Below, piece after piece: positions 6,038 through 63,805 of a stretch of DNA of 64,000 bases. Where the stretch lies: the IMG/VR virus record IMGVR_UViG_3300037010_002844, positions 245,434 to 309,433 of that record, one strand, 5' to 3'. A program made the position numbers and the translations under genes. Below the pieces are notes generated by a model. It did no database searches. It had not been told where the DNA came from and saw only the letters and a list, made by a program, of their open reading frames with translations. Every line of letters begins with the position of its first letter. The stretch's first letter is position 1.

Positions 6038-7309
6038 TCAGCGGCCGATCTTATTCAGGATGGTGTCGTAGGACGAGGCGTTGAGCTTTTCCTTGGACGC
6101 CATCAACTCACACCACTCGCGGGCATTGGCCGCACGGCTTTCCCACAAGTTGAAGTAGGGCGCCGCCCAATCGTTGGACTGCATCACCTTCTCAGCGAAG
6201 AGCTTCCGCGAACCCGCTGCGTAATCACGCCAGGCCTCGAAGTTGCGATCGACAGAGATGAGATACTCGCGCACCGCAGCCTGCATCGAACGCAGCTCCC
6301 CAGCCACGTCGGCCTCGACCAACGGGATGACGTCATCAATCGTGCCGCGGATGATGGCCTCGACTGCGGATCGCTTCGAGACAGTCACTAGGTCCTTCGC
6401 TTTGGAAGACAGGACCCAGGCCCGAGACTTGACCTTCTGACGGTTGAAATTCGAGTCAACGACGACCGCGCCTTCCAACTTTGATGGGTCCGCCGCCTCA
6501 ACAAACGCTGCCAGCGCCTTCGGTTCCGACAACTTCCAACGCTGCGGCCGGTTGACGTGCTGCAGTTGCAGCTCCTCGATGACCGATTCATTGCCCGATG
6601 CCGTGTGACGAATCGCCAACAGCGTCACACGAGGCTCGTCATAGCGAACCACGATGCGGTTGTGCGGGCTCGTTAGCTCGAAGACGTACGTCAGTTCCTT
6701 GTTGAGATGAACGACCTGATCGAAGTCGCTCGGAACCCAGTCTAGCTTTTGGCCCGAGTTCGCCTCACGGGTCTCGATCAGGGCCTTGAAGAACAGGTCG
6801 CGGAACGTCATGTTGCCGATCGACATGTCATCCTTGCGGATCGGCAGGTCAGCCTCGGGAACCGACCGCGTACCGACGTGCCACTGACCATGAAGTTCGT
6901 CCCAGTAGACGATGCAACACGTGCCATCGAGCTTCTCGTAGACGCGGAGCTCGGGATCCGACCAGTCGACCCCCGCGGCCGCGACATCGCCGTGGTTGTA
7001 GAAGCGATTCATGGGCCAGGCCAACAGCTCGCAGTCGCCTACGACGCGGTCGCGCCACTTTGCTGTCGACAGAGGCGCGCCACCACGCCGGGCCTCATCG
7101 TGGAGGAACTGCTCCGTCTGCTCGCGAGATGGACGAATCACCATGCCGCGGCACTGTTCCATCAAGGCATTGCCCGACTTCGCCAAGATCTGATCATAGT
7201 TGAGTGAGAACTTATCGAAGCGCGAGTTGGGCCGCGCACAGACACCGTGCTCGTCCTCGAGCTCACGGAACGTATGGGAACGCAGGTACTCCAACACCAA
7301 CGGCTTCAT
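6038..7309 (-). CDS. T4 Rnl1-like RNA ligase
   Basis: Nucleotidyltransferase motif I EKLDGT, RFYN, FELTSPHNRIVVRY, EGAVV, KVK; own promoter upstream. Confidence 0.88.
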   Translation of the reverse strand: MKPLVLEYLRSHTFRELEDEHGVCARPNSRFDKFSLNYDQILAKSGNALMEQCRGMVIRPSREQTEQFLHDEARRGGAPLSTAKWRDRVVGDCELLAWPMNRFYNHGDVAAAGVDWSDPELRVYEKLDGTCCIVYWDELHGQWHVGTRSVPEADLPIRKDDMSIGNMTFRDLFFKALIETREANSGQKLDWVPSDFDQVVHLNKELTYVFELTSPHNRIVVRYDEPRVTLLAIRHTASGNESVIEELQLQHVNRPQRWKLSEPKALAAFVEAADPSKLEGAVVVDSNFNRQKVKSRAWVLSSKAKDLVTVSKRSAVEAIIRGTIDDVIPLVEADVAGELRSMQAAVREYLISVDRNFEAWRDYAAGSRKLFAEKVMQSNDWAAPYFNLWESRAANAREWCELMASKEKLNASSYDTILNKIGR

Positions 7310-9260: not shown

Positions 9261-9878
9261 TTACCGTAGAGTCCGGAACAACTCGTTATTGTCGCCGCAG
9301 TAAGCCTTCAGCTTGTCGAACCAGGCCCGCGACTTCTGCTTGAACATCACGGGTGCCTTGGTTTTCTTGTCGTTCTTGCCTTTGCAGACGACGCCTTCAA
9401 AGGTCATGCCGGGCAGCGAACCGTCCCGAACGCTCTCTATGAAGGCTTCCGTCACTTCGCCTTCGTACAAGACCTTGGCGTGGTCGAGGTGACCAAACAA
9501 CTTCAGGTAGAGCTCAGGCTCCAGAATGCCGGCGCCGAAGGGCGCCACGTCGATCAGGGTTACCGTCTGGTCTTCCTTGAGGTCGTGCATGCCGAAGGCA
9601 CTATTGGGCCCCCAAAATTCGAAGAAGCAGCAGGCCGAGACCCACTTCGATTCCTTGAGCACCTCGTCGATGCCCTTGCCGTACTTGTCGTTGATCAGTC
9701 CGGGCACCTTACCGAAGACAGGATCGGATGCGTCCACTAGCCGCGTGCGGGTGCCGAACTTGTAGAAGCCTTTTTTGCGCGACCACTCGGCGCGGACGTT
9801 GGACCCGTCGAGCTTGTCGAAGGCGACGATTGGGACTCGGCACTCGGTGGCGTAGGGGATTGAGGGATATGATTTCAT
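9261..9878 (-). CDS. RNA ligase (compact Rnl2/Rnl5-like nucleotidyltransferase)
   Basis: YPSI...FDKLDGSN motif I, FFEFWG, FEGVVCK, MFKQK; start taken at MKSYPSI. Confidence 0.8.
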   Translation of the reverse strand: MKSYPSIPYATECRVPIVAFDKLDGSNVRAEWSRKKGFYKFGTRTRLVDASDPVFGKVPGLINDKYGKGIDEVLKESKWVSACCFFEFWGPNSAFGMHDLKEDQTVTLIDVAPFGAGILEPELYLKLFGHLDHAKVLYEGEVTEAFIESVRDGSLPGMTFEGVVCKGKNDKKTKAPVMFKQKSRAWFDKLKAYCGDNNELFRTLR

Positions 9879-10019
9879 GACTTTCTTCACAGAAAAACAT
9901 TCGTCGCCATCGATGTCATCGATAGCCCTAGATCGTCGGTGGTACGATACCACTACGCCACGATCACAAAAGCTTTCACATGTAGGCCATTGGGGACGGC
10001 CTTGGTGGTGATTACTTGC

Positions 10020-11050: not shown

Positions 11051-11139
11051 TGCGGAAGGTGCGAGAGTCGAACTCGCAATAGGCTCATCACCTATGTCGG
11101 TTTTCAAGACCGATGGGCCTGCCAATGCCCAAACCTTCC
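11051..11139 (-). tRNA. tRNA-Ser(UGA)
   Basis: Loop CTTGAAA, long variable arm. Confidence 0.85.
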
Positions 11140-11911: not shown

Positions 11912-12298
11912 TCAAATCAACTTCAGGTTACCTGTGATCCTGTCGAGCAGCGCACCCTCGCATGGTCCGAAGGCTGCACAAGTCAATGTCGGAACTCCAT
12001 TGAACTCTGTCCTTCCGGCGTCGATGATGGGATGCACCTCGACGTCCTCAATTTCTGCCTTGAAGATGAGGTCCTTCAAGGCATCTTCCGAATCCACACC
12101 CACCACGATCTTGGTGAAGGAACCCGACAACCATGTGGCCTCTGCGGGTGTCAGCTTGATGACGACCTCGTCTCCACGTTGCGCTTCGTTGTTGTCAACG
12201 AGAAACTTCATCGAAGCATGGGCGACCTGGGCGGCCAATTTGCCCTTTTTCATGTTCAGGTCCTTTCGTACGACGATGACCTGCTTCACGTCACTCAT
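11912..12298 (-). CDS. pth2: Peptidyl-tRNA hydrolase, Pth2 family
   Basis: KQVIVVRKDL.M.KGKLAAQVAHAS...KIVV...IDAGRTE...T..A.GP...ITG.LKL; GGAGG SD before start. Confidence 0.93.
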   Translation of the reverse strand: MSDVKQVIVVRKDLNMKKGKLAAQVAHASMKFLVDNNEAQRGDEVVIKLTPAEATWLSGSFTKIVVGVDSEDALKDLIFKAEIEDVEVHPIIDAGRTEFNGVPTLTCAAFGPCEGALLDRITGNLKLI

Positions 12299-12456
12299 GG
12301 TGTCCTCCGGCTTGTCAAGGATCGGTCTCGTGCCTTTCGGCACGGGCTTCCCCCTCGGCTCTTCGCCGAATCTCGGACGCTTGCGCGTCTTGGGAGTTGA
12401 TAGGTCTTGCGGGCGCATAACCGGCCTTGATAAGTATCGGAAGTTCGAGGTTCAGT

Positions 12457-12786
12457 TCACTTGCTGGGGCGCTCCGCCTTTTCTTGTGCGCGACGTTCCT
12501 TCGCCTTCTGCTTCACCTGCTCAGCGGGCGCAGTTCGCTTGCCAATGCCGGTCAACGGCTTGGACTCTGCGAGAGCCACCGCGATCCGGGCGCGCTGCTT
12601 CTGGGCACCAACACCCTTGCCAAGCCGGCCGTCGAGGCTGGCGAGCTGTTCCCGAGGCGACAGCTTCTGCCACACCGTGAGGCGTTCCTTCGCCTCTTTT
12701 TGACGCAGCTTGCGCAGATCGGGCCGCGGGCCGCCGCCGGTGAACTTACGGACGTTGTTGAGCTTCTTGGTAGCCTTCAGGTTCAT
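12457..12786 (-). CDS. Basic hypothetical protein
   Basis: 109-aa K/R-rich ORF with SD. Confidence 0.65.
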   Translation of the reverse strand: MNLKATKKLNNVRKFTGGGPRPDLRKLRQKEAKERLTVWQKLSPREQLASLDGRLGKGVGAQKQRARIAVALAESKPLTGIGKRTAPAEQVKQKAKERRAQEKAERPSK

Positions 12787-13730: not shown

Positions 13731-13831
13731 AACGTGCTTCACCTGATGCAGGATTCGAACCTGCTGCCCCGGATCACGAGCCCGGTGTGTTAACCCATAC
13801 ACCATCGATGGTTACTAATTGTGCGCACGTC
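13731..13831 (-). ncRNA. AGUA/GAA-clamp element with tRNA-body cargo
   Basis: ACGTGC/GCACGT outer stem, AGTAACC...AGGTGAA, internal D/anticodon/T arms, no acceptor stem. Confidence 0.65.
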
Positions 13832-14592: not shown

Positions 14593-15054
14593 TCAGGGAA
14601 TGTCATCGAGGGCTGACTCTGCATCAACTTCGGCCCTGATTTCATCACGAACCTCCTGCAAGATACGACCCAACCAATTCTGTCCCTGCCCGCGACAAAC
14701 GCCCCAAAACTTATCGTTCCAGTGGTTGCCCTCGATGAGCTCAGCATCCTCAGTCGCCAGCAACATCTCGCGGAGCAGCGGGTTCTCGAACTTGGCCTTG
14801 ACGAACTTTCGCATCAAGTCGACCTTGACCTGGTCCCAATCCTCGCGGAGGGTGACAGAGCGGCCGAGCTTCTTGGCCTCGGCCGCCGTCTTCGACTTGC
14901 GCACCATCTCACGTTGCGTCTCGTCTAGGGTCTTGGCAGCCTGATAGGCATGCTCAACCGTGGCATAATGCCGGCCGTCGACGATGATGGTGGATGGATG
15001 AAAGTTCGACAAGAACGCGAACTCATTGATGAACCTGTCGATCTTTGCTGACAC
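14593..15054 (-). CDS. NADAR family (YbiA-like) hydrolase
   Basis: FLSNF...Y.TVEHAYQA.K...AKKLGR...W...M...AKF...LL.T...L.E...D.FWG...G.N.LG..L..VR. Confidence 0.92.
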   Translation of the reverse strand: MSAKIDRFINEFAFLSNFHPSTIIVDGRHYATVEHAYQAAKTLDETQREMVRKSKTAAEAKKLGRSVTLREDWDQVKVDLMRKFVKAKFENPLLREMLLATEDAELIEGNHWNDKFWGVCRGQGQNWLGRILQEVRDEIRAEVDAESALDDIP

Positions 15055-15095: not shown

Positions 15096-15765
15096 TCACC
15101 AGTCACCCTTGAGCCACTTCGACAGGTTGTACTTCTGACCTGTCCTATGGTCAGTGACCAGGTCGTCCTGTGTCCGGTAGGTTCGTACCTTGTCGCCGCG
15201 CTGACCTGAGCCCACCTGTTGCTTGCGCTCGTTGGAGCGCTCGCGGTAGAGCCGTTCAGACTCAGCCTCGTAGAGGCGAGCGGCCAAGACCTTGAAGGCC
15301 ATCGCCCGGTTCTGGTGCTGCGAGCGCTCGTTGTCAATGCGAACCTGAAAGCCGGTGGGCTTGTGGACCGCGATGACGCACGACTCTGTCTTGTTGCGAT
15401 TTTGGCCGCCCGGACCCGAGCCTCGGGCAGTGGTGATTTCCACATCACGGGGGTCTAGTGCCTGGCCGATGACGGTGTCTGGGTTTAAGACCGCGACCGT
15501 CACTGTCGACGTTTGCACACGACCACGCTTTTCTGTCGGTGGAACGCGCTGCCACCTGTGCCCGCCGCCTTCATTTGCAAAGGTCTGCAGGGTTCCTGGG
15601 CCGGAGACAGAGAGCATCACCATCCCTGGTCGATCATCGATTACAGTCGCCTCAAAGACCCCTCCGGGCCGCCGCGTTGGCGTATGCCCGGAGCTGCTCC
15701 TGAACGAGAAGTCTTGCGTCCTCGCCGCCCTCGGCGGCCCTGATCTCGATGATGACAGTTTCCAT
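15096..15765 (-). CDS. Class I peptide release factor (short, lacking domain 1) expressed via a +1 programmed frameshift
   Basis: ORF1 METVIIEIRAAEGGEDA...RRGL ends at CTT-TGA; the +1 frame continues EATVID...EGGGHRWQRVPPT...GSGPGGQNRNKTES...ERSQHQNR...KVRTY. Confidence 0.9.
15652..15666 (-). promoter_or_regulatory. prfB-type +1 frameshift signal
   Basis: CGG AGG GGT CTT TGA G = internal SD + CUU UGA. Confidence 0.88.
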
Positions 15766-15766
15766 G

Positions 15767-16078
15767 TTAGTCCTCCACGGCAACGAGGATGCCGAAGACG
15801 GTCTTCCTCGTGCACCAACCGTTGATGTGGCCGTGATTGTTGCTGATCTGGTAGCGACCATCGCTGCCGATAGCTGACACCTTGTGAAGCATCTGGATGC
15901 CGTTGACCTTGCACAGGACAACGTCGTCAACCTCGACCAACGTTTCGTCCGTGACAGGGGCGACCGTGACCAGCTGCCCGCTGCAGATCCGCGGGACCAT
16001 ACTGTTCCCGTGTGGGCGAAACTTGACCGTCTGACCCTCACGTAGAGCCTGGACGTTGAAGAGAGATCAGTCTGTCAT
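15767..16078 (-). CDS. S24/S26-like peptidase-fold protein with in-frame TGA at codon 4 (readthrough or pseudogene)
   Basis: ATG ACA GAC TGA TCT...FRPHGNSMVP...D.VLCKVNG..LHKV. Confidence 0.65.
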
Positions 16079-16799: not shown

Positions 16800-16899
16800 A
16801 AACGCTTCACCTTCACGATCGGATTCGAACCGACGACCCAGTAGTTGGACACCACCTGCTCTACCAGACTGAGCTACGTCTCATGAGTTACTTACGTTT
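16800..16899 (-). ncRNA. AGUA/GAA-clamp element with tRNA-body cargo
   Basis: AAACG/CGTTT, AGTAACT...AGGTGAA; canonical D and T arms, scrambled anticodon arm. Confidence 0.65.
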
Positions 16900-17193: not shown

Positions 17194-17330
17194 ATACTTG
17201 GCGATTGCACGTGTTAGCAACTTACCACTACCCATGCACCCATCATCGAGATCATCAGACGAGTGTTTCCCGACGTAGACCTTTCCGTTAAACGAGATTT
17301 TCGATGCAGTAGACGTAATGAAACACGATC
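17194..17330 (-). pseudogene. GIY-YIG (SegB-like) homing endonuclease remnant
   Basis: NGKVYVGKHSSDDLDDGCMGSGKLLTRAIAKYG, truncated at the tRNA-Glu 5' end. Confidence 0.8.
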
Positions 17331-17367
17331 TATTTATCGACAACTTCGATATTCGATCGAGTTGCAC

Positions 17368-17443
17368 AGGGTGAGCGAGGGGATTCGAACCCCCACCTTC
17401 AGGGCCACAACCTGACGTGCAGAACCACTATACCACGCCCACC
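17368..17443 (-). tRNA. tRNA-His(GUG)
   Basis: Loop TTGTGGC, G-1. Confidence 0.88.
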
Positions 17444-17832: not shown

Positions 17833-17937
17833 TGAATTTTCACTTGCACGGAATCGAACCGTTCTACTCGCTTTTTAGGCAAATGTGCTACCGTTACACT
17901 AAGTCAGACGCGTTAGCGCCCAAGAGTTACTAACTCT
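17833..17937 (-). ncRNA. AGUA/GAA-clamp element with tRNA-body cargo
   Basis: GAGTT/AATTC outer stem; AGTA-ACT...AGT-GAA (compensatory change relative to ACC/GGT). Confidence 0.65.
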
Positions 17938-18490: not shown

Positions 18491-18877
18491 TTAGTAGCTG
18501 GACTGATCCATTCCGCCCGAGCAGGCCTGGCACATATACTTGCCTTCGACCTGCTGCAGCTGGTTAGACGGGACCATTTCACCACAGCCCTCGCAAGGAT
18601 CAAACGAACCGTCCACCTCATTGATTTCGCGGTAGTCGCCCTGCTTCCAAGCCTTGAGTTCGGCCTGTGAGATCTTCTGGAATGATTCATTCATTCCTGA
18701 GCGGCTGTTGGGCCCCTTTGGCATACTGACCAAACTGTTCTTAGGATCACGCGGATTCTGCACGTCGATCTTGGTAGGTGCACCGTAGAGGTGTTCTTCC
18801 TTTTCGACGGGCCAACCGTAGCACTCCTTGACAACGTTGCGGATGATCTGCCGCAGCTCAGACAACCTGATCTTCAT
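18491..18877 (-). CDS. Protein with MKIRLSELRQIIR leader and C-terminal Zn ribbon
   Basis: Leader motif, CxxC...CxxC; ATACTTA 6 nt upstream. Confidence 0.75.
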   Translation of the reverse strand: MKIRLSELRQIIRNVVKECYGWPVEKEEHLYGAPTKIDVQNPRDPKNSLVSMPKGPNSRSGMNESFQKISQAELKAWKQGDYREINEVDGSFDPCEGCGEMVPSNQLQQVEGKYMCQACSGGMDQSSY

Positions 18878-18891
18878 ACGATCTAAGTATG

Positions 18892-18972
18892 TGGTCCACC
18901 CTCTCCCTCTCAGGATTGAATCGAGGCCTCCTGGGTTTCAACCAAGTGCGCTACCATTACGCCAAGGGTGGA
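18892..18972 (-). pseudogene. Degenerate tRNA-Phe(GAA)
   Basis: Loop TTGAAAC; T-arm disrupted. Confidence 0.55.
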
Positions 18973-19620: not shown

Positions 19621-19695
19621 TGGTCAGGGTGGGGAGACTTGCACTCCCGTCCTCCTCGATCCGAACGAGGCCGTCTGCTTCTGACTTACACCCTG
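19621..19695 (-). tRNA. tRNA-Pro(CGG)
   Basis: Loop TTCGGAT, ACCA. Confidence 0.85.
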
Positions 19696-19699
19696 ATAG

Positions 19700-20011
19700 C
19701 GTCGATCGACTGATCGTCTAGGAGAAGGGCATCACTCCCTCTCACCTACCTCGCAGCAGTCGCGTTGTTCCGTCATAGGACTCAGCAGTTAGCTAGACCG
19801 CCTCAACATCCCAGCAGGAATTTACCTGCATGCACCCCAGCTCTGATCCGGTATTGTCGGTGCACTGTCTCTCGTGAGAATAGGGAACTGCCTGATCCCA
19901 CGTCGGACGACGTTACGCTTCCATGCGCCTCGGACCTGACCAGTTCCCGGTGCCAGTGCCTTTCCCCGAGCAGGGATGAACTTCAGCCACGAGACGATCA
20001 GACGATCGACG
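19700..20011 (-). ncRNA. ~310-nt structured ncRNA of unknown family
   Basis: 20-nt terminal inverted repeat (1 mismatch), internal GGGAACTG/CAGTTCCC helix, sits exactly between two tRNAs. Confidence 0.6.
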
Positions 20012-20085
20012 GTCGGCACGATGGGATCTGAACCCACGACCTCTGCTGTGTGAGAGCAGCGATCTAGCCCCTGAGCTAAGTGCCG
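20010..20085 (-). tRNA. tRNA-Val(CAC)
   Basis: Loop CTCACAC. Confidence 0.8.
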
Positions 20086-20087
20086 AT

Positions 20088-20185
20088 TAGTGGACCCGGC
20101 GGGATCGAACCGCCCTGTCGGGTGCCCGTAACCTCCTGACATGGAGGAACAGCAACACCGTGTATGCCCGTTACACCACGGGTCC
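20088..20185 (-). tRNA. tRNA-like RNA with elongated anticodon arm (GUC in apical loop)
   Basis: GGACCCG/CGGGTCC acceptor, normal D and T arms, anticodon arm about 20 nt longer than normal. Confidence 0.6.
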
Positions 20186-20698: not shown

Positions 20699-21472
20699 TT
20701 ATGCGGGAGGCTGGCGGTAGACGGTCTGCGCGCCCTCAGACGAAATCCCAAGCGAAAGATTAGCGTCGGCGAGGATCACGGGCAACCGCATCGTCGTCCC
20801 ATCCAGCTCGCAGTCTAGGCTCACCAGCCTCAGACCGTGGCTGTAGTCGGCGTACGTGTTCTCATGGCCTAGGTACAGAGGCTGGATCGGCCGCCCATTG
20901 AGCTGCTGCCAACCATAGATGGCGACCTGCTTCGTCTGACGCTCCAAGCGCTGCGTCATGACGACATCCTTCTTGTGACCCGCGGTCAACTTGGTGGCAT
21001 CGAGCTTCATCATCTCGAGTTGCTTGTTGATGCGCTGGTTGTGAATGACCAGACGCTCAGTTGTCATCATTGACGCATCATAAGGCGGGCCCCATGGGAG
21101 AGGTTGCAGCTTGTTGACCGCTGCGGCCCAAATCAGGTCAGACATCCTAGTCGTCGGTAGCATGCAATCCCACGCATCGCACACCTGCTGCGCCGCGAGC
21201 GGAGACAACGAGGTACGTAGGTAGTCAGCATTAGTGCCGATGCACAACACGTCGGGCATCACGTGGAGCGTCAGAGTGTGCGTCTGGTTGTCGGCTGAGC
21301 GAAACGTCGTCGTCACGTCGACAAATGATCGCATGTGCGCAGGCACGTTGCCCGCGAGCAAGGCTGCGACGGCGTGAGCGTCACGGGTGATGTGATCCAT
21401 GCCCGTCACTTCGCTGACGAACTGTGCGGCGGTGATCGGCGTCTCGGAAACTGGGATGATGGGCGATGTCAT
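20699..21472 (-). CDS. Conserved hypothetical protein (possibly cell-wall acting)
   Basis: 257 aa with motifs AGHKKDVV, VAIYGW, PIQPL, H...YADYSHG.RLV. Confidence 0.75.
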   Translation of the reverse strand: MTSPIIPVSETPITAAQFVSEVTGMDHITRDAHAVAALLAGNVPAHMRSFVDVTTTFRSADNQTHTLTLHVMPDVLCIGTNADYLRTSLSPLAAQQVCDAWDCMLPTTRMSDLIWAAAVNKLQPLPWGPPYDASMMTTERLVIHNQRINKQLEMMKLDATKLTAGHKKDVVMTQRLERQTKQVAIYGWQQLNGRPIQPLYLGHENTYADYSHGLRLVSLDCELDGTTMRLPVILADANLSLGISSEGAQTVYRQPPA

Positions 21473-43341: not shown

Positions 43342-43417
43342 TGGTGCGCGAGGGTGGAGTTGAACCACCGACCCCCAAGGATAATCCTTGGTGCTCTTCT
43401 GCCTGAGCTACTCGCAC
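43342..43417 (-). tRNA. tRNA with non-canonical anticodon loop (GA-TTA-TC)
   Basis: Intact body with ACCA; CCAAGGA-TTA-TCCTTGG. Confidence 0.7.
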
Positions 43418-63024: not shown

Positions 63025-63288
63025 TCAGTCATTGAAGATGTGAAGCCGGGTGCCCTGCTCGTCGGCCGACTTGTAGATCCAGGCAGCGATCTCGCCGTCG
63101 TTCACCTCGGTGTTCTCGTAGAGGAAGTCCTTGGTGCGCCCGGTGCGGTGGCTCTGAACCGTCAGCTTCATCGGGGCGCACCAGTCTGGGCTCATGCAGG
63201 CGATGCTGGAGGCCTCCGTGATGCCAACGTTATCCTTCCAGATGAAGATGAAGCCAGGGATGACCGGGATGTCGCAGGAAGTTTCCAT
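63025..63288 (-). CDS. Early hypothetical protein
   Basis: Leaderless promoter motif. Confidence 0.68.
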   Translation of the reverse strand: METSCDIPVIPGFIFIWKDNVGITEASSIACMSPDWCAPMKLTVQSHRTGRTKDFLYENTEVNDGEIAAWIYKSADEQGTRLHIFND

Positions 63289-63320
63289 GGTTCTAGTCTA
63301 CCACGATCCTCACTAAAGGT

Positions 63321-63506
63321 TCACATCTCGCGGGTGATGATCTCCTCATCGTCAACGTCTTTGTTCCAGACGTTGATCGACAGGCACCGCGCCTTCTAGG
63401 AGGCGAGCTCTGTTGCTTCCTCCTCCGTCGCAGCCTCGACCTCAACGCCCCGCGAGAGGCGTTGGATGACCTTAACGGTCTAGGTGCGGACCTTGGGCTT
63501 AGGCAT
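63321..63506 (-). pseudogene. DpnD/PcfM-like gene with two in-frame TAG codons
   Basis: MPKPKVRT*TVKVIQRLSRGVEVEAATEEEATELAS*KARC...; intact promoter. Confidence 0.6.
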
Positions 63507-63580
63507 GTCTAGATCCTAAACACGCCGGGACTTGAAGATTCACAGTGCAAACTTTCGTCCATGTGTGGTAGACTAGAACC

Positions 63581-63805
63581 ATGGAAACCATCCAGTGCCG
63601 GACCTGCGGCGGCGTCGCCCATCCCGCGACCGGGTGCGCCTACACCGCGACCTTCATCGTCTGCGGGCCGTGCACCCGCGAGTTCTGGGCCTGGCTGCGC
63701 TCGCGGGTCAACAGCCGCCCGAGTCGGCGCCACGGTGGCCCGAGCTTTTACGATCACGTCAACCGCGTCGCTCCCCCTGTGCAAATCCACCACGAAACGG
63801 AGTAA
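63581..63805 (+). CDS. Early Zn-finger protein
   Basis: GTGCAA-N18-TAGACT-N6-ATG; CxxC...CxxC. Confidence 0.7.
   Translation: METIQCRTCGGVAHPATGCAYTATFIVCGPCTREFWAWLRSRVNSRPSRRHGGPSFYDHVNRVAPPVQIHHETE

What the first reader, a model, noticed from the sequence alone, without database searches (positions are those of the whole stretch)
19700..20011. About 310-nt structured RNA embedded in the tRNA array
Seen: CGTCGATCGACTGATCGTCT (19700-19719) and AGACGATCAGACGATCGACG (19992-20011) form a 20-bp closing stem with one mismatch, exactly filling the gap between tRNA-Val and tRNA-Pro. Internal helices include GGGAACTG/CAGTTCCC and GCAGG/CCTGC, and there is no credible ORF. A segment GGTCAGGTCC...GGAAGC loosely recalls SRP helix 8. 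Inference: a large ncRNA released by tRNA processing, analogous in setting to GOLLD/ROOL RNAs, family unrecognised.
Basis: partly seen in the sequence, partly recalled or inferred. Interest (0 to 1): 0.68.

Follow-up and report, generated by a model that had tools for sequence, protein, structure and literature searches.

The report
New structured RNA in phage tRNA array
A roughly 312-base gene wedged between transfer-RNA genes of a 309-kb phage encodes a previously undescribed, intricately folded non-coding RNA that six related soil and sediment phage lineages also carry, but its function is unknown.

Summary
A 20-bp stem with one U.U mismatch (window 19700-19719 / 19992-20011) closes a ~312-nt element that fills the gap between two tRNA genes. 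The functional strand is the minus strand, the same as all 47 tRNAs called in the window. The order is tRNA-Val(cac), then the element, then 4 nt, then tRNA-Pro(cgg).

I found six further distinct copies in related huge-phage contigs. Every copy starts at the CC after a tRNA discriminator base. Every copy ends 3-5 nt before a tRNA or a long tRNA-like gene.

A seven-sequence alignment supports a 12-helix fold:
- 96.7% of cells are paired.
- 25 pairs carry compensatory changes, against 12.3 +/- 2.0 in shuffles and 1-8 in slid controls.
- G.U intermediates and better folding of the tRNA-sense strand point to RNA rather than DNA.

There is no conserved ORF and no codon periodicity. No Rfam family matches, even at E<=10. 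The SRP-like stretch is simply one strand of a covarying helix.

The element is single-copy and is patchily present among close relatives. It lies in an island of tRNA-repair and ribosome-rescue genes.

Best reading: a new family of stable RNA excised by tRNA punctuation, comparable in setting to GOLLD/ROOL and the phage T4 stable RNAs. Expression and function remain untested.

The parts
19696..20012 (-). Whole element: about 312 nt from the CC after the tRNA-Val discriminator to the end of the closing stem, plus a 4-nt spacer (CUAU) before tRNA-Pro(cgg)
   Evidence: Homologues at L005:11216-11531, L113:5373-5690, L121:4395-4712, L124:2028-2348, L129:3654-3968 and L132:4334-4650
19990..20011 (-). 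P1 closing helix, 5' arm (20-22 bp with the 3' arm)
   Evidence: 95.5% of cells paired. Stem positions 10 and 11 read G-C/U.U (window), A-U/C-G (L005) and G.U/U.G (L113, L121, L124)
19700..19721 (-). P1 closing helix, 3' arm
19964..19975 (-). H2 hairpin (CCCU / GGGG)
   Evidence: C-G to U-A covariation in 3 sequences
19932..19960 (-). H3 hairpin (GGCACUGGC / GUCAGGUCC).
   Evidence: 100% paired, 2 pairs with double changes
19941..19948 (-). GGGAACUG in the H3 loop, the 5' partner of a proposed loop-loop (kissing) helix
   Evidence: 94.5% paired with 19883-19890; one double change (L132) and one break (L005) (and by eye)
19883..19890 (-). CAGUUCCC in the H7 apical loop, the 3' partner of the loop-loop helix
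19915..19927 (-). Long-range helix H5, 5' strand (CGCAUGGAAGCGU)
   Evidence: pairs with 19752-19765; C-G / U-A / U-G covariation at one pair; 100% paired
19744..19771 (-). Most conserved block (GGAACAACGCGACUGCUGCGAGGUAGGU). It holds the H5 3' strand and an unpaired Shine-Dalgarno-like AGGUAGGU
19867..19908 (-). H7 hairpin, the most variable arm
   Evidence: 7 of 10 pairs carry compensatory changes
19830..19865 (-). H8 hairpin with a 22-nt loop holding the conserved GAC...UCAGAGCU
   Evidence: 100% paired, one A-U to G-C change
19814..19829 (-). H9 hairpin GCAGG-UAAAUU-CCUGC
   Evidence: 2 pairs with double changes; L124 has a 3-nt loop insertion
19777..19812 (-). H10/H11 arm ending in a 7-nt loop CUAGCUA with the palindrome UAGCUA (19790-19796)
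   Evidence: 7 pairs with double changes. The loop is conserved in 6 of 7 sequences; L132 differs at its 3' end
19722..19743 (-). H12 hairpin just inside P1
   Evidence: 2 pairs with double changes
20011..20085 (-). Upstream tRNA-Val(cac). Its ..GA-CC runs straight into P1, and the A of CCA is replaced by the stem
19621..19695 (-). Downstream tRNA-Pro(cgg), 4 nt after P1

Best explanation
The element is the gene of a new family of structured non-coding RNA, about 312 nt long, carried by a clade of huge phages from soil and sediment. Shown: it is conserved in seven distinct contigs and has a covarying fold. The fold comprises a 20-22 bp terminal helix, two 5' hairpins, a long-range helix enclosing a five-way junction with almost no linker nucleotides, a 3' hairpin, and a probable 8-bp loop-loop contact. 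It is strand-specific (tRNA sense), non-coding, and single-copy. Inferred: it is co-transcribed with the tRNA array and cut out by tRNA punctuation. The 5' end would be made by 3' processing of the abutting tRNA (RNase Z, or another endonuclease followed by CCA completion). The 3' end would be made by RNase P cleavage at the tRNA or tRNA-like gene 3-5 nt downstream. The long terminal helix would then clamp both ends and protect the RNA from exonucleases, or it could serve as an RNase III site. The conserved single-stranded blocks would be the working surfaces. These are the AGGUAGGU stretch, the UAGCUA palindromic loop and the GAC...UCAGAGCU loop. The gene sits inside an island of 50 tRNAs, an RF1-like factor, Pth2, NADAR and two RNA ligases, and the phage also carries a tmRNA. 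My favoured guess is therefore a stable trans-acting RNA that takes part in the phage's takeover or protection of translation. It could be a scaffold or decoy for a ribosome-directed or tRNA-directed factor, and it may self-associate through its palindromic loop. The stated confidence applies to the shown and biogenesis-level claims, not to this functional guess.
For: Homologues and position. Covariation: in two sequences, 10 compensatory pairs and 0 broken, with consensus energy -119.2 against a null of -80.6 +/- 6.0 (0 of 300 simulations reached it). In seven sequences, 96.7% of cells are paired and 25 pairs carry double changes, against 12.3 +/- 2.0 in shuffles (0/500) and 1-8 in slid controls. 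Strand and RNA nature: 12 G.U pairs in the window copy; consensus energy -119 kcal/mol on the sense strand against -99 on the antisense strand; G.U/U.G intermediates in P1. Non-coding. No known family. Single copy, with arms not reused elsewhere. Conservation above neighbours: 81% nt identity to L005, against a median of 68% for shared tRNAs and 52% aa for the adjacent protein. tRNA abutment in all copies. No promoter or terminator signal next to it. Translation and tRNA-repair context.
Against: There is no evidence of transcription or of discrete ends. The only runs holding this DNA are four DNA metagenomes. Only seven distinct sequences are known, and three of them are close to each other, so some helices (parts of P1, H3, H5 and H8) hardly vary. 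Presence is patchy even among close relatives: a phage whose neighbouring protein is 88% identical lacks it. The RNA is therefore dispensable, or it moves by recombination. The CC that follows the tRNA discriminator may hinder RNase Z (my own knowledge), so the 5' cut is uncertain. The proposed function is a guess from context.
Confidence: 0.75

Rival explanations
1. It is a cis-acting spacer of the tRNA precursor. On this view it is a long RNase III or RNase E processing platform, or a fold that times or insulates maturation of the neighbouring tRNAs, with no function once released.
For: A 20-bp perfect duplex is a plausible RNase III substrate (my own knowledge). It always abuts tRNAs with 0 nt on one side and 3-5 nt on the other. 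It is dispensable in close relatives.
Against: Twelve helices, a five-way junction and long invariant single-stranded blocks are far more than a cleavage site needs. Relatives process the same tRNA pairs without it: in L010, Val is followed by Pro after 1 nt. The flanking tRNAs differ between copies (Val-cac, Val-tac or Pro-ggg upstream; Pro-cgg, Pro-tgg, Pro-ggg or a tRNA-like gene downstream), while the element stays constant.
Confidence: 0.12
2. It is a mobile DNA element, either a MITE-like sequence with 20-bp terminal inverted repeats or a cassette spread by homing endonucleases. On this view the apparent RNA fold is incidental.
For: Terminal inverted repeats and sharp homology boundaries at the arms. 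Patchy distribution among close relatives. It is more similar between phages than the surrounding tRNAs. GIY-YIG and HNH genes lie in relatives' arrays.
Against: There is one copy per genome, and the arms occur nowhere else in the 309-kb genome. In IMG/VR the arm pattern recurs only in the homologue, plus two chance hits inside coding DNA. There is no consistent target-site duplication. The phage has no reverse transcriptase, and I saw no transposase in the Pfam, NCBIfam or PHROG scans of array ORFs. Eleven internal helices covary, with G.U pairs that would be mismatches in DNA, and the sense strand folds better. Lateral spread by recombination is compatible with an RNA gene and does not replace that reading.
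Confidence: 0.07
3. It is a divergent member of a known RNA class: SRP RNA, RNase P RNA, tmRNA, 6S RNA, Y RNA, a group I intron, GOLLD or ROOL.
For: A superficial GGUCAGGUCC...GGAAGC resemblance to SRP helix 8. GGGGAAAGG after a hairpin faintly recalls the J3/4-P4 region of RNase P (my own reading). Y RNAs also have paired ends.
Against: No Rfam model scores at E<=10 on either of two copies. The SRP-like stretch is a covarying Watson-Crick strand. The phage has a bona fide tmRNA elsewhere, at 93 bits. It has no Ro/TROVE gene. The element is not inside a gene, as an intron would be.
Confidence: 0.03
4. It encodes a small protein.
For: Mechanical ORFs of 88-90 aa exist on the opposite strand in the window and L005 copies.
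Against: The ORFs differ in extent and frame between copies. The alignment has 1- and 2-nt indels. There is no third-position bias (24/23/16). Substitutions concentrate in unpaired columns (45 of 140, against 24 of 180 in paired columns) and preserve pairing.
Confidence: 0.01

Closest known systems
GOLLD and ROOL RNAs (large ornate RNAs of phages and prophages)
   Same: They are large, intricately folded, non-coding RNAs of unknown function. They are encoded by phages and often lie in or next to tRNA islands (PMC12286853; PMC5737381). They are patchily distributed.
   Different: There is no sequence or structure match (Rfam CMs). This element is much smaller: about 312 nt, against roughly 580 nt (from my own recall) and more than 800 nt. 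It is closed by a 20-bp terminal helix and is bounded exactly by tRNAs. Whether it oligomerises is unknown.
Phage T4 stable RNAs 'species 1' and 'species 2' (rnaC, rnaD) in the T4 tRNA cluster (my own knowledge; no paper was retrieved here)
   Same: They are non-tRNA stable RNAs of unknown function, co-transcribed with phage tRNAs and released by the tRNA-processing machinery.
   Different: The T4 RNAs are about 120-140 nt and are unrelated phage RNAs. No comparison of sequence or fold was possible with the tools.
tRNA-punctuated RNAs in general (mitochondrial transcripts, MALAT1-mascRNA) (my own knowledge)
   Same: The ends of a non-tRNA RNA are defined by RNase P and RNase Z acting on abutting tRNA structures.
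   Different: Those are eukaryotic or organellar systems. Here the arrangement is inferred only from gene anatomy.
Bacterial and phage Y RNAs (YrlA) bound by Ro/Rsr
   Same: The 5' and 3' ends pair in a long stem. Some are phage-encoded and lie next to tRNA-like modules.
   Different: The phage has no Ro/TROVE gene. There is no Rfam Y RNA or YrlA match. This element is two to three times longer.

Membership tests
SRP RNA (Rfam bacterial small and large SRP, archaeal SRP) | Match to the family covariance model, including helix 8 with its conserved symmetric and asymmetric loops and GNRA tetraloop | tested here: not met
   No SRP model scores at E<=10 on the window or L005 copy
SRP RNA | The GGUCAGGUCC segment behaves as a conserved non-Watson-Crick loop | tested here: not met
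   It is the 3' strand of helix H3 and pairs with CACUGGC. Two of its pairs covary, and one G is A in L005
GOLLD / ROOL | Match to the Rfam covariance models | tested here: not met
   No hits at gathering score in the whole 309-kb genome, and none at E<=10 on the element
GOLLD / ROOL | Phage-encoded and associated with tRNA islands | tested here: met
   This is a setting, not homology
tmRNA | tRNA-like domain plus tag reading frame, detectable by ARAGORN or Rfam RF00023 | tested here: not met
   Not called on the element. The phage's real tmRNA is at G000:162403-162774
RNase P RNA | Match to the bacterial, archaeal or type-T covariance models (P4 core, CR-I to CR-V) | tested here: not met
   No hit at E<=10. 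No complement to the candidate P4 5' strand near the 3' end (by eye)
Y RNA / YrlA | Ro (TROVE) partner gene and a match to the Rfam model | tested here: not met
Group I intron | Inserted in a host gene; match to RF00028 | tested here: not met
   It lies between complete tRNAs with no model hit
MITE / TIR transposon | Terminal inverted repeats | tested here: met
   20-nt arms
MITE / TIR transposon | Multiple dispersed copies sharing the ends; target-site duplication | tested here: not met
   Single copy and no other arm matches. The flanks differ between copies and show no duplication
Retron ncRNA | Adjacent reverse transcriptase | tested here: not met
   No RVT_1 domain in the genome
Stable RNA released by tRNA processing (functional class) | A discrete transcript with ends at the RNase P and 3'-processing sites | not testable with these tools
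   No RNA run holds the sequence. Only the anatomy supports it, in 7 of 7 copies

The most novel reading that the evidence does not exclude
The RNA is an active player rather than a passive stable RNA. One option is an RNA-only assembly of the GOLLD/ROOL type, built through its palindromic UAGCUA loop. A second is a ribosome-binding or tRNA-enzyme-binding decoy that shields the phage's translation apparatus from host tRNA-directed or ribosome-directed defences. A third is a molecule whose clamped ends are sealed into a circle by one of the two phage RNA ligases encoded in the same island. Any of these would make it a new functional class of phage RNA.
Probability: 0.15. Interest if true: 0.85.

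Novelty: new variant of a known kind. Interest (0 to 1): 0.62.

Why it matters
Large, elaborately folded bacterial and phage RNAs are rare. Each new class (OLE, GOLLD, ROOL, raiA, HEARO) has opened questions about what RNA can do without protein. This one has three practical advantages. At about 312 nt it is small enough for chemical probing and cryo-EM. Its ends are precisely defined by tRNA punctuation. It sits in an island of tRNA-repair and ribosome-rescue genes in huge phages, whose investment in translation is itself unexplained (PMC7162821). Its presence or absence among near-identical arrays offers natural controls for testing a fitness role.

Tried and rejected
**Known families**
- Rfam at gathering score on the window and the rest of the genome, and at E<=10 on two copies, returned only tRNAs and one tmRNA.

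**Sequence and pattern searches for more copies**
- blastn against INPHARED phages found no match.
Six were exact or degenerate patterns covering four conserved blocks, the arm pattern and a loop-based structural pattern. They recovered only L005/L006, apart from two chance hits to the arm pattern inside coding DNA and one unrelated protein-gene family hit by the structural pattern.
- The one metagenome scan gave 23 chance hits. Two scans of GTDB genomes gave 0 and 4 chance hits.
- These patterns were drawn from only two sequences. They turned out to miss the later homologues by single substitutions.

**Covariance-model searches**
- Models R1 and R2 were run over 46 loci and about 40 whole IMG/VR records of relatives. 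They found nothing beyond L005/L006.
- Relatives of a virus record cannot be drawn.

**Other checks**
- The 316-nt gap after tRNA-Val in L014 is not a structured analogue (z = -1.2).
- A scan for other long inverted repeats next to tRNAs found none. The 24-bp repeat at 63281-63588 is a pair of divergent gene starts.
- No partner gene was found in the phage for Ro/TROVE, RNase III or reverse transcriptase.
- GATC enrichment in the element is not special, because the genome has twice the expected GATC count.
- Complementarity of H10/H11 to the tRNA-Val D and anticodon arms is strong in L005 but is not kept in the window copy (by eye). I dropped it.

**Expression**
- The four runs that hold the DNA are all DNA runs, and they show no variants in the element.

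**Literature**
- No description of this RNA was found.

Full report
**Setting.** The window is the last 64 kb of a 309,433-bp IMG/VR virus record that CheckV rates 91% complete. ARAGORN tRNA genes in the window, all on the minus strand, in two arrays at 10.0-20.6 kb and 40.7-44.8 kb. The whole genome has 50 tRNA/tmRNA calls, one of them a tmRNA at G000:162403-162774 that Rfam confirms at 93 bits. Between the tRNAs lie several translation and repair genes:
- an RF1-like protein at 15096-15914
- a NADAR protein at 14593-15054
- a Pth2 peptidyl-tRNA hydrolase at 11912-12418
- an Rnl2-like RNA ligase at 9261-9953
- a T4 RnlA-family ligase at 6038-7309

The only relative in the cultured and deposited phage collection is a 485-kb uncultured huge phage. 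Four DNA metagenomes from sediment and microbial mats hold the sequence. This is the kind of translation-gene-rich huge phage described in PMC7162821.

**The observation.** The arms 19700-19719 and 19992-20011 are 95% complementary and 272 nt apart. They fill the gap between tRNA-Pro(cgg) 19621-19695 and tRNA-Val(cac) 20011-20085. On the tRNA strand, the order is as follows:
1. tRNA-Val ends ..GA-CC.
2. The second C opens the stem.
3. The stem closes about 312 nt later.
4. Four nucleotides (CUAU) precede G1 of tRNA-Pro.

The sense-strand fold is -132.6 kcal/mol with z = -3.2. No promoter-like or terminator-like site flanks the element. Every ORF over the region is mechanical.

**Homologues.** A protein 700 nt upstream (window 20699-21472, minus strand) served as an anchor. 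Relatives of it in IMG/VR gave 46 syntenic loci. Only one phage, seen in two samples as L005 and L006, holds the element. That copy is 81% identical over 317 nt, whereas the anchor protein is 52% identical and shared tRNAs have a median identity of 68%.

Exact-pattern scans of IMG/VR, JGI metagenomes and GTDB genomes added nothing. Covariance models run over about 40 whole records of relatives also added nothing.

The big protein search on the anchor returned 461 relatives. Twelve contig look-ups followed. These yielded five more distinct copies, each detected by the model at 173-186 bits:
- L113 (JGI)
- L121, identical to L122 and L123; L125 has the same element but a different downstream tRNA
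- L124
- L129
- L132

The upstream neighbour is tRNA-Val(cac), tRNA-Val(tac) or tRNA-Pro(ggg). The downstream neighbour is tRNA-Pro(cgg, tgg or ggg). In L005 and L129 it is a tRNA-like gene of about 110-117 nt with a canonical T-arm. The 5' junction is always ..GA-CC-GUCGAUC, and the 3' spacer is always 3-5 nt.

**Structure.**
- *Two sequences.* RNAalifold gave 90 pairs, of which 10 had compensatory double changes and none was broken. In a simulation I re-dealt the same 63 substitutions at random. It gave a consensus energy of -80.6 +/- 6.0 against the observed -119.2, and 3.5 +/- 1.6 double changes with a maximum of 7 (0 of 300 runs reached the observed values).
- *Seven sequences (alignment A5).* The consensus keeps 90 pairs. 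Of all cells, 96.7% are standard pairs. Twenty-five pairs carry changes on both sides, against 12.3 +/- 2.0 in shuffles (0/500) and 1-8 in slid registers. Every helix except parts of P1, H3, H5 and H8 varies.
- *Long-range helix.* The helix between the two most conserved blocks (19915-19927 with 19752-19765) now shows C-G, U-A and U-G at one pair.
- *P1.* Positions 10 and 11 of P1 read G-C/U.U in the window, A-U/C-G in L005 and G.U/U.G in three others. This is the wobble-mediated path expected of RNA, not of DNA.
- *Strand.* The window copy has 12 G.U pairs. The sense strand gives a better consensus than the antisense strand (-119 against -99 kcal/mol).
- *Substitution pattern.* In the window-L005 pair, substitutions hit unpaired columns more often (45 of 140 against 24 of 180) and show no codon periodicity.
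GGGAACTG/CAGTTCCC joins the loop of H3 to the apical loop of H7. It is kept at 7-8 bp in all copies, with one double change and one break. I read it as a kissing-loop contact with modest support.

**What it is not.**
- *Known RNA families.* No Rfam family matches at E<=10 on two copies. The SRP-like words are one strand of the covarying helix H3. The phage's tmRNA is elsewhere in the genome.
- *Partner genes.* The genome encodes no Ro/TROVE protein, no RNase III and no reverse transcriptase.
- *Transposon.* There is one copy per genome, the arms are not reused elsewhere, and there is no target-site duplication. This argues against a MITE.

**Distribution.** The element is present in six of the anchor-protein lineages I could inspect downstream. 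It is absent from several close ones: L010 at 66% identity to the window protein, and L115-118 at 88% identity to the L113 protein. The arrays are mosaics. Individual tRNAs reach 87-93% identity between otherwise distant phages. GIY-YIG or HNH genes lie in relatives' arrays. Gain and loss by recombination is therefore likely, but the compensatory evolution shows that the RNA fold is under selection wherever the element is kept.

**Mechanism.**
- *Shown.* This is a conserved, strand-specific, non-coding fold bounded by tRNA genes.
- *Inferred.* It is co-transcribed with the array and excised by tRNA punctuation. The terminal 20-22 bp helix then clamps the ends. Invariant single-stranded blocks act as interaction surfaces: AGGUAGGU next to H12, the palindromic UAGCUA loop, and GAC...UCAGAGCU in the H8 loop.
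- *Guess.* From context, I favour a role in the phage's control or protection of translation.

The main rivals are a purely cis-acting processing platform and a mobile DNA cassette. Both are weakened by the complexity of the fold and its RNA-specific covariation. Nothing tests expression: the runs that hold the DNA are DNA runs, and their contigs show no variation in the element. I found no description of this RNA in the literature.

**Verdict.** This is a real feature and a new RNA family in a known niche, the phage tRNA island, which is also home to GOLLD, ROOL and the T4 stable RNAs. Its function is open.

Noticed in passing
window 20090-20185 (-), with spacer to 20240; L010:11210-11365; L011:12073-12217: ARAGORN calls this 96-nt gene 'tRNA-???' with a 4-base anticodon. 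It has a normal acceptor stem, D-arm and T-arm, but a long extended arm tipped by a CCUCC/GGAGG hairpin in place of the anticodon arm. It is conserved in two relatives with about 10 compensatory pairs. It could be an intron-containing tRNA or a tRNA-like RNA.
   Followed up: partly
L005:11532-11648 and L129:3969-4083: Long (110-117 nt) tRNA-like genes follow the element after 4 nt. They have paired acceptor ends and a GGUUCGAAUCC / GGUUCGAUUCC T-loop. Neither ARAGORN nor the Rfam tRNA model calls them.
   Followed up: partly
window 43342-43417 (-) and 15096-15914 (-): A suppressor tRNA with anticodon UUA (reads UAA) lies in the second array. An RF1-like protein of 272 aa matches only the C-terminal half of RF1, with weaker matches to PrfH and ArfB. 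Long ORFs read well in the standard code, so I assumed no recoding.
   Followed up: partly
window 6038-7309, 9261-9953, 11912-12418, 14593-15054 (all -): The tRNA array is interleaved with a T4 RnlA-family RNA ligase, an Rnl2-like RNA ligase, a Pth2 peptidyl-tRNA hydrolase and a NADAR-family protein. Together they form a tRNA-repair and ribosome-rescue island.
   Followed up: partly
window 63281-63304 / 63565-63588; L013:12225-12248 / 12514-12537: A perfect 24-bp inverted repeat 260 nt apart. Each arm holds the start codon and leader of one of two divergent genes (GUGGUAGACUAGAACC-AUG). A relative has the same arrangement with a related motif. It may be a shared promoter or leader signal of this phage group.
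   Followed up: partly
G000:162403-162774 (-), outside the window: The phage encodes a tmRNA (Rfam RF00023, 93 bits). Two further tRNAs lie near G000:228.8 kb.
   Followed up: yes
window 18735-18890 (-); L010:11799-11955: A small conserved ORF (MKIRLSELRQIIRNVV...) sits after a tRNA-like sequence at 18901-18971 that only Rfam detects, two genes downstream of tRNA-Phe. The stretch after tRNA-His (17216-17368) is also conserved in L005 and L007 and looks coding.
   Followed up: partly
window 18901-18971, 16815-16879, 13744-13806, 17848-17901 (-): Rfam finds four tRNA-like sequences at 29-43 bits that ARAGORN does not call. They may be degenerate or unusual tRNAs.
   Followed up: no
window 11052-11139 (-): tRNA-Ser(tga) scores above the gathering cut-off of the tRNA-Sec model (54.3 against 47 bits). 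It is 92-93% identical to the copy in L007, a phage whose anchor protein is only 47% identical. This is an example of the mosaic nature of these arrays.
   Followed up: no
L110:6433-7026, L113:7257-7823, L119:5021-5479, L125:2193-2627: Relatives carry GIY-YIG (SegE-like), HNH or PD-(D/E)XK genes inside their tRNA arrays. These are plausible drivers of cassette exchange.
   Followed up: no
L115:5590-6756 (and L116, L117): A relative that lacks the element carries an EF-Tu gene (388 aa) inside the same tRNA array.
   Followed up: no
whole genome G000: GATC occurs about twice as often as base composition predicts (2305 observed against 1178 expected).
   Followed up: partly
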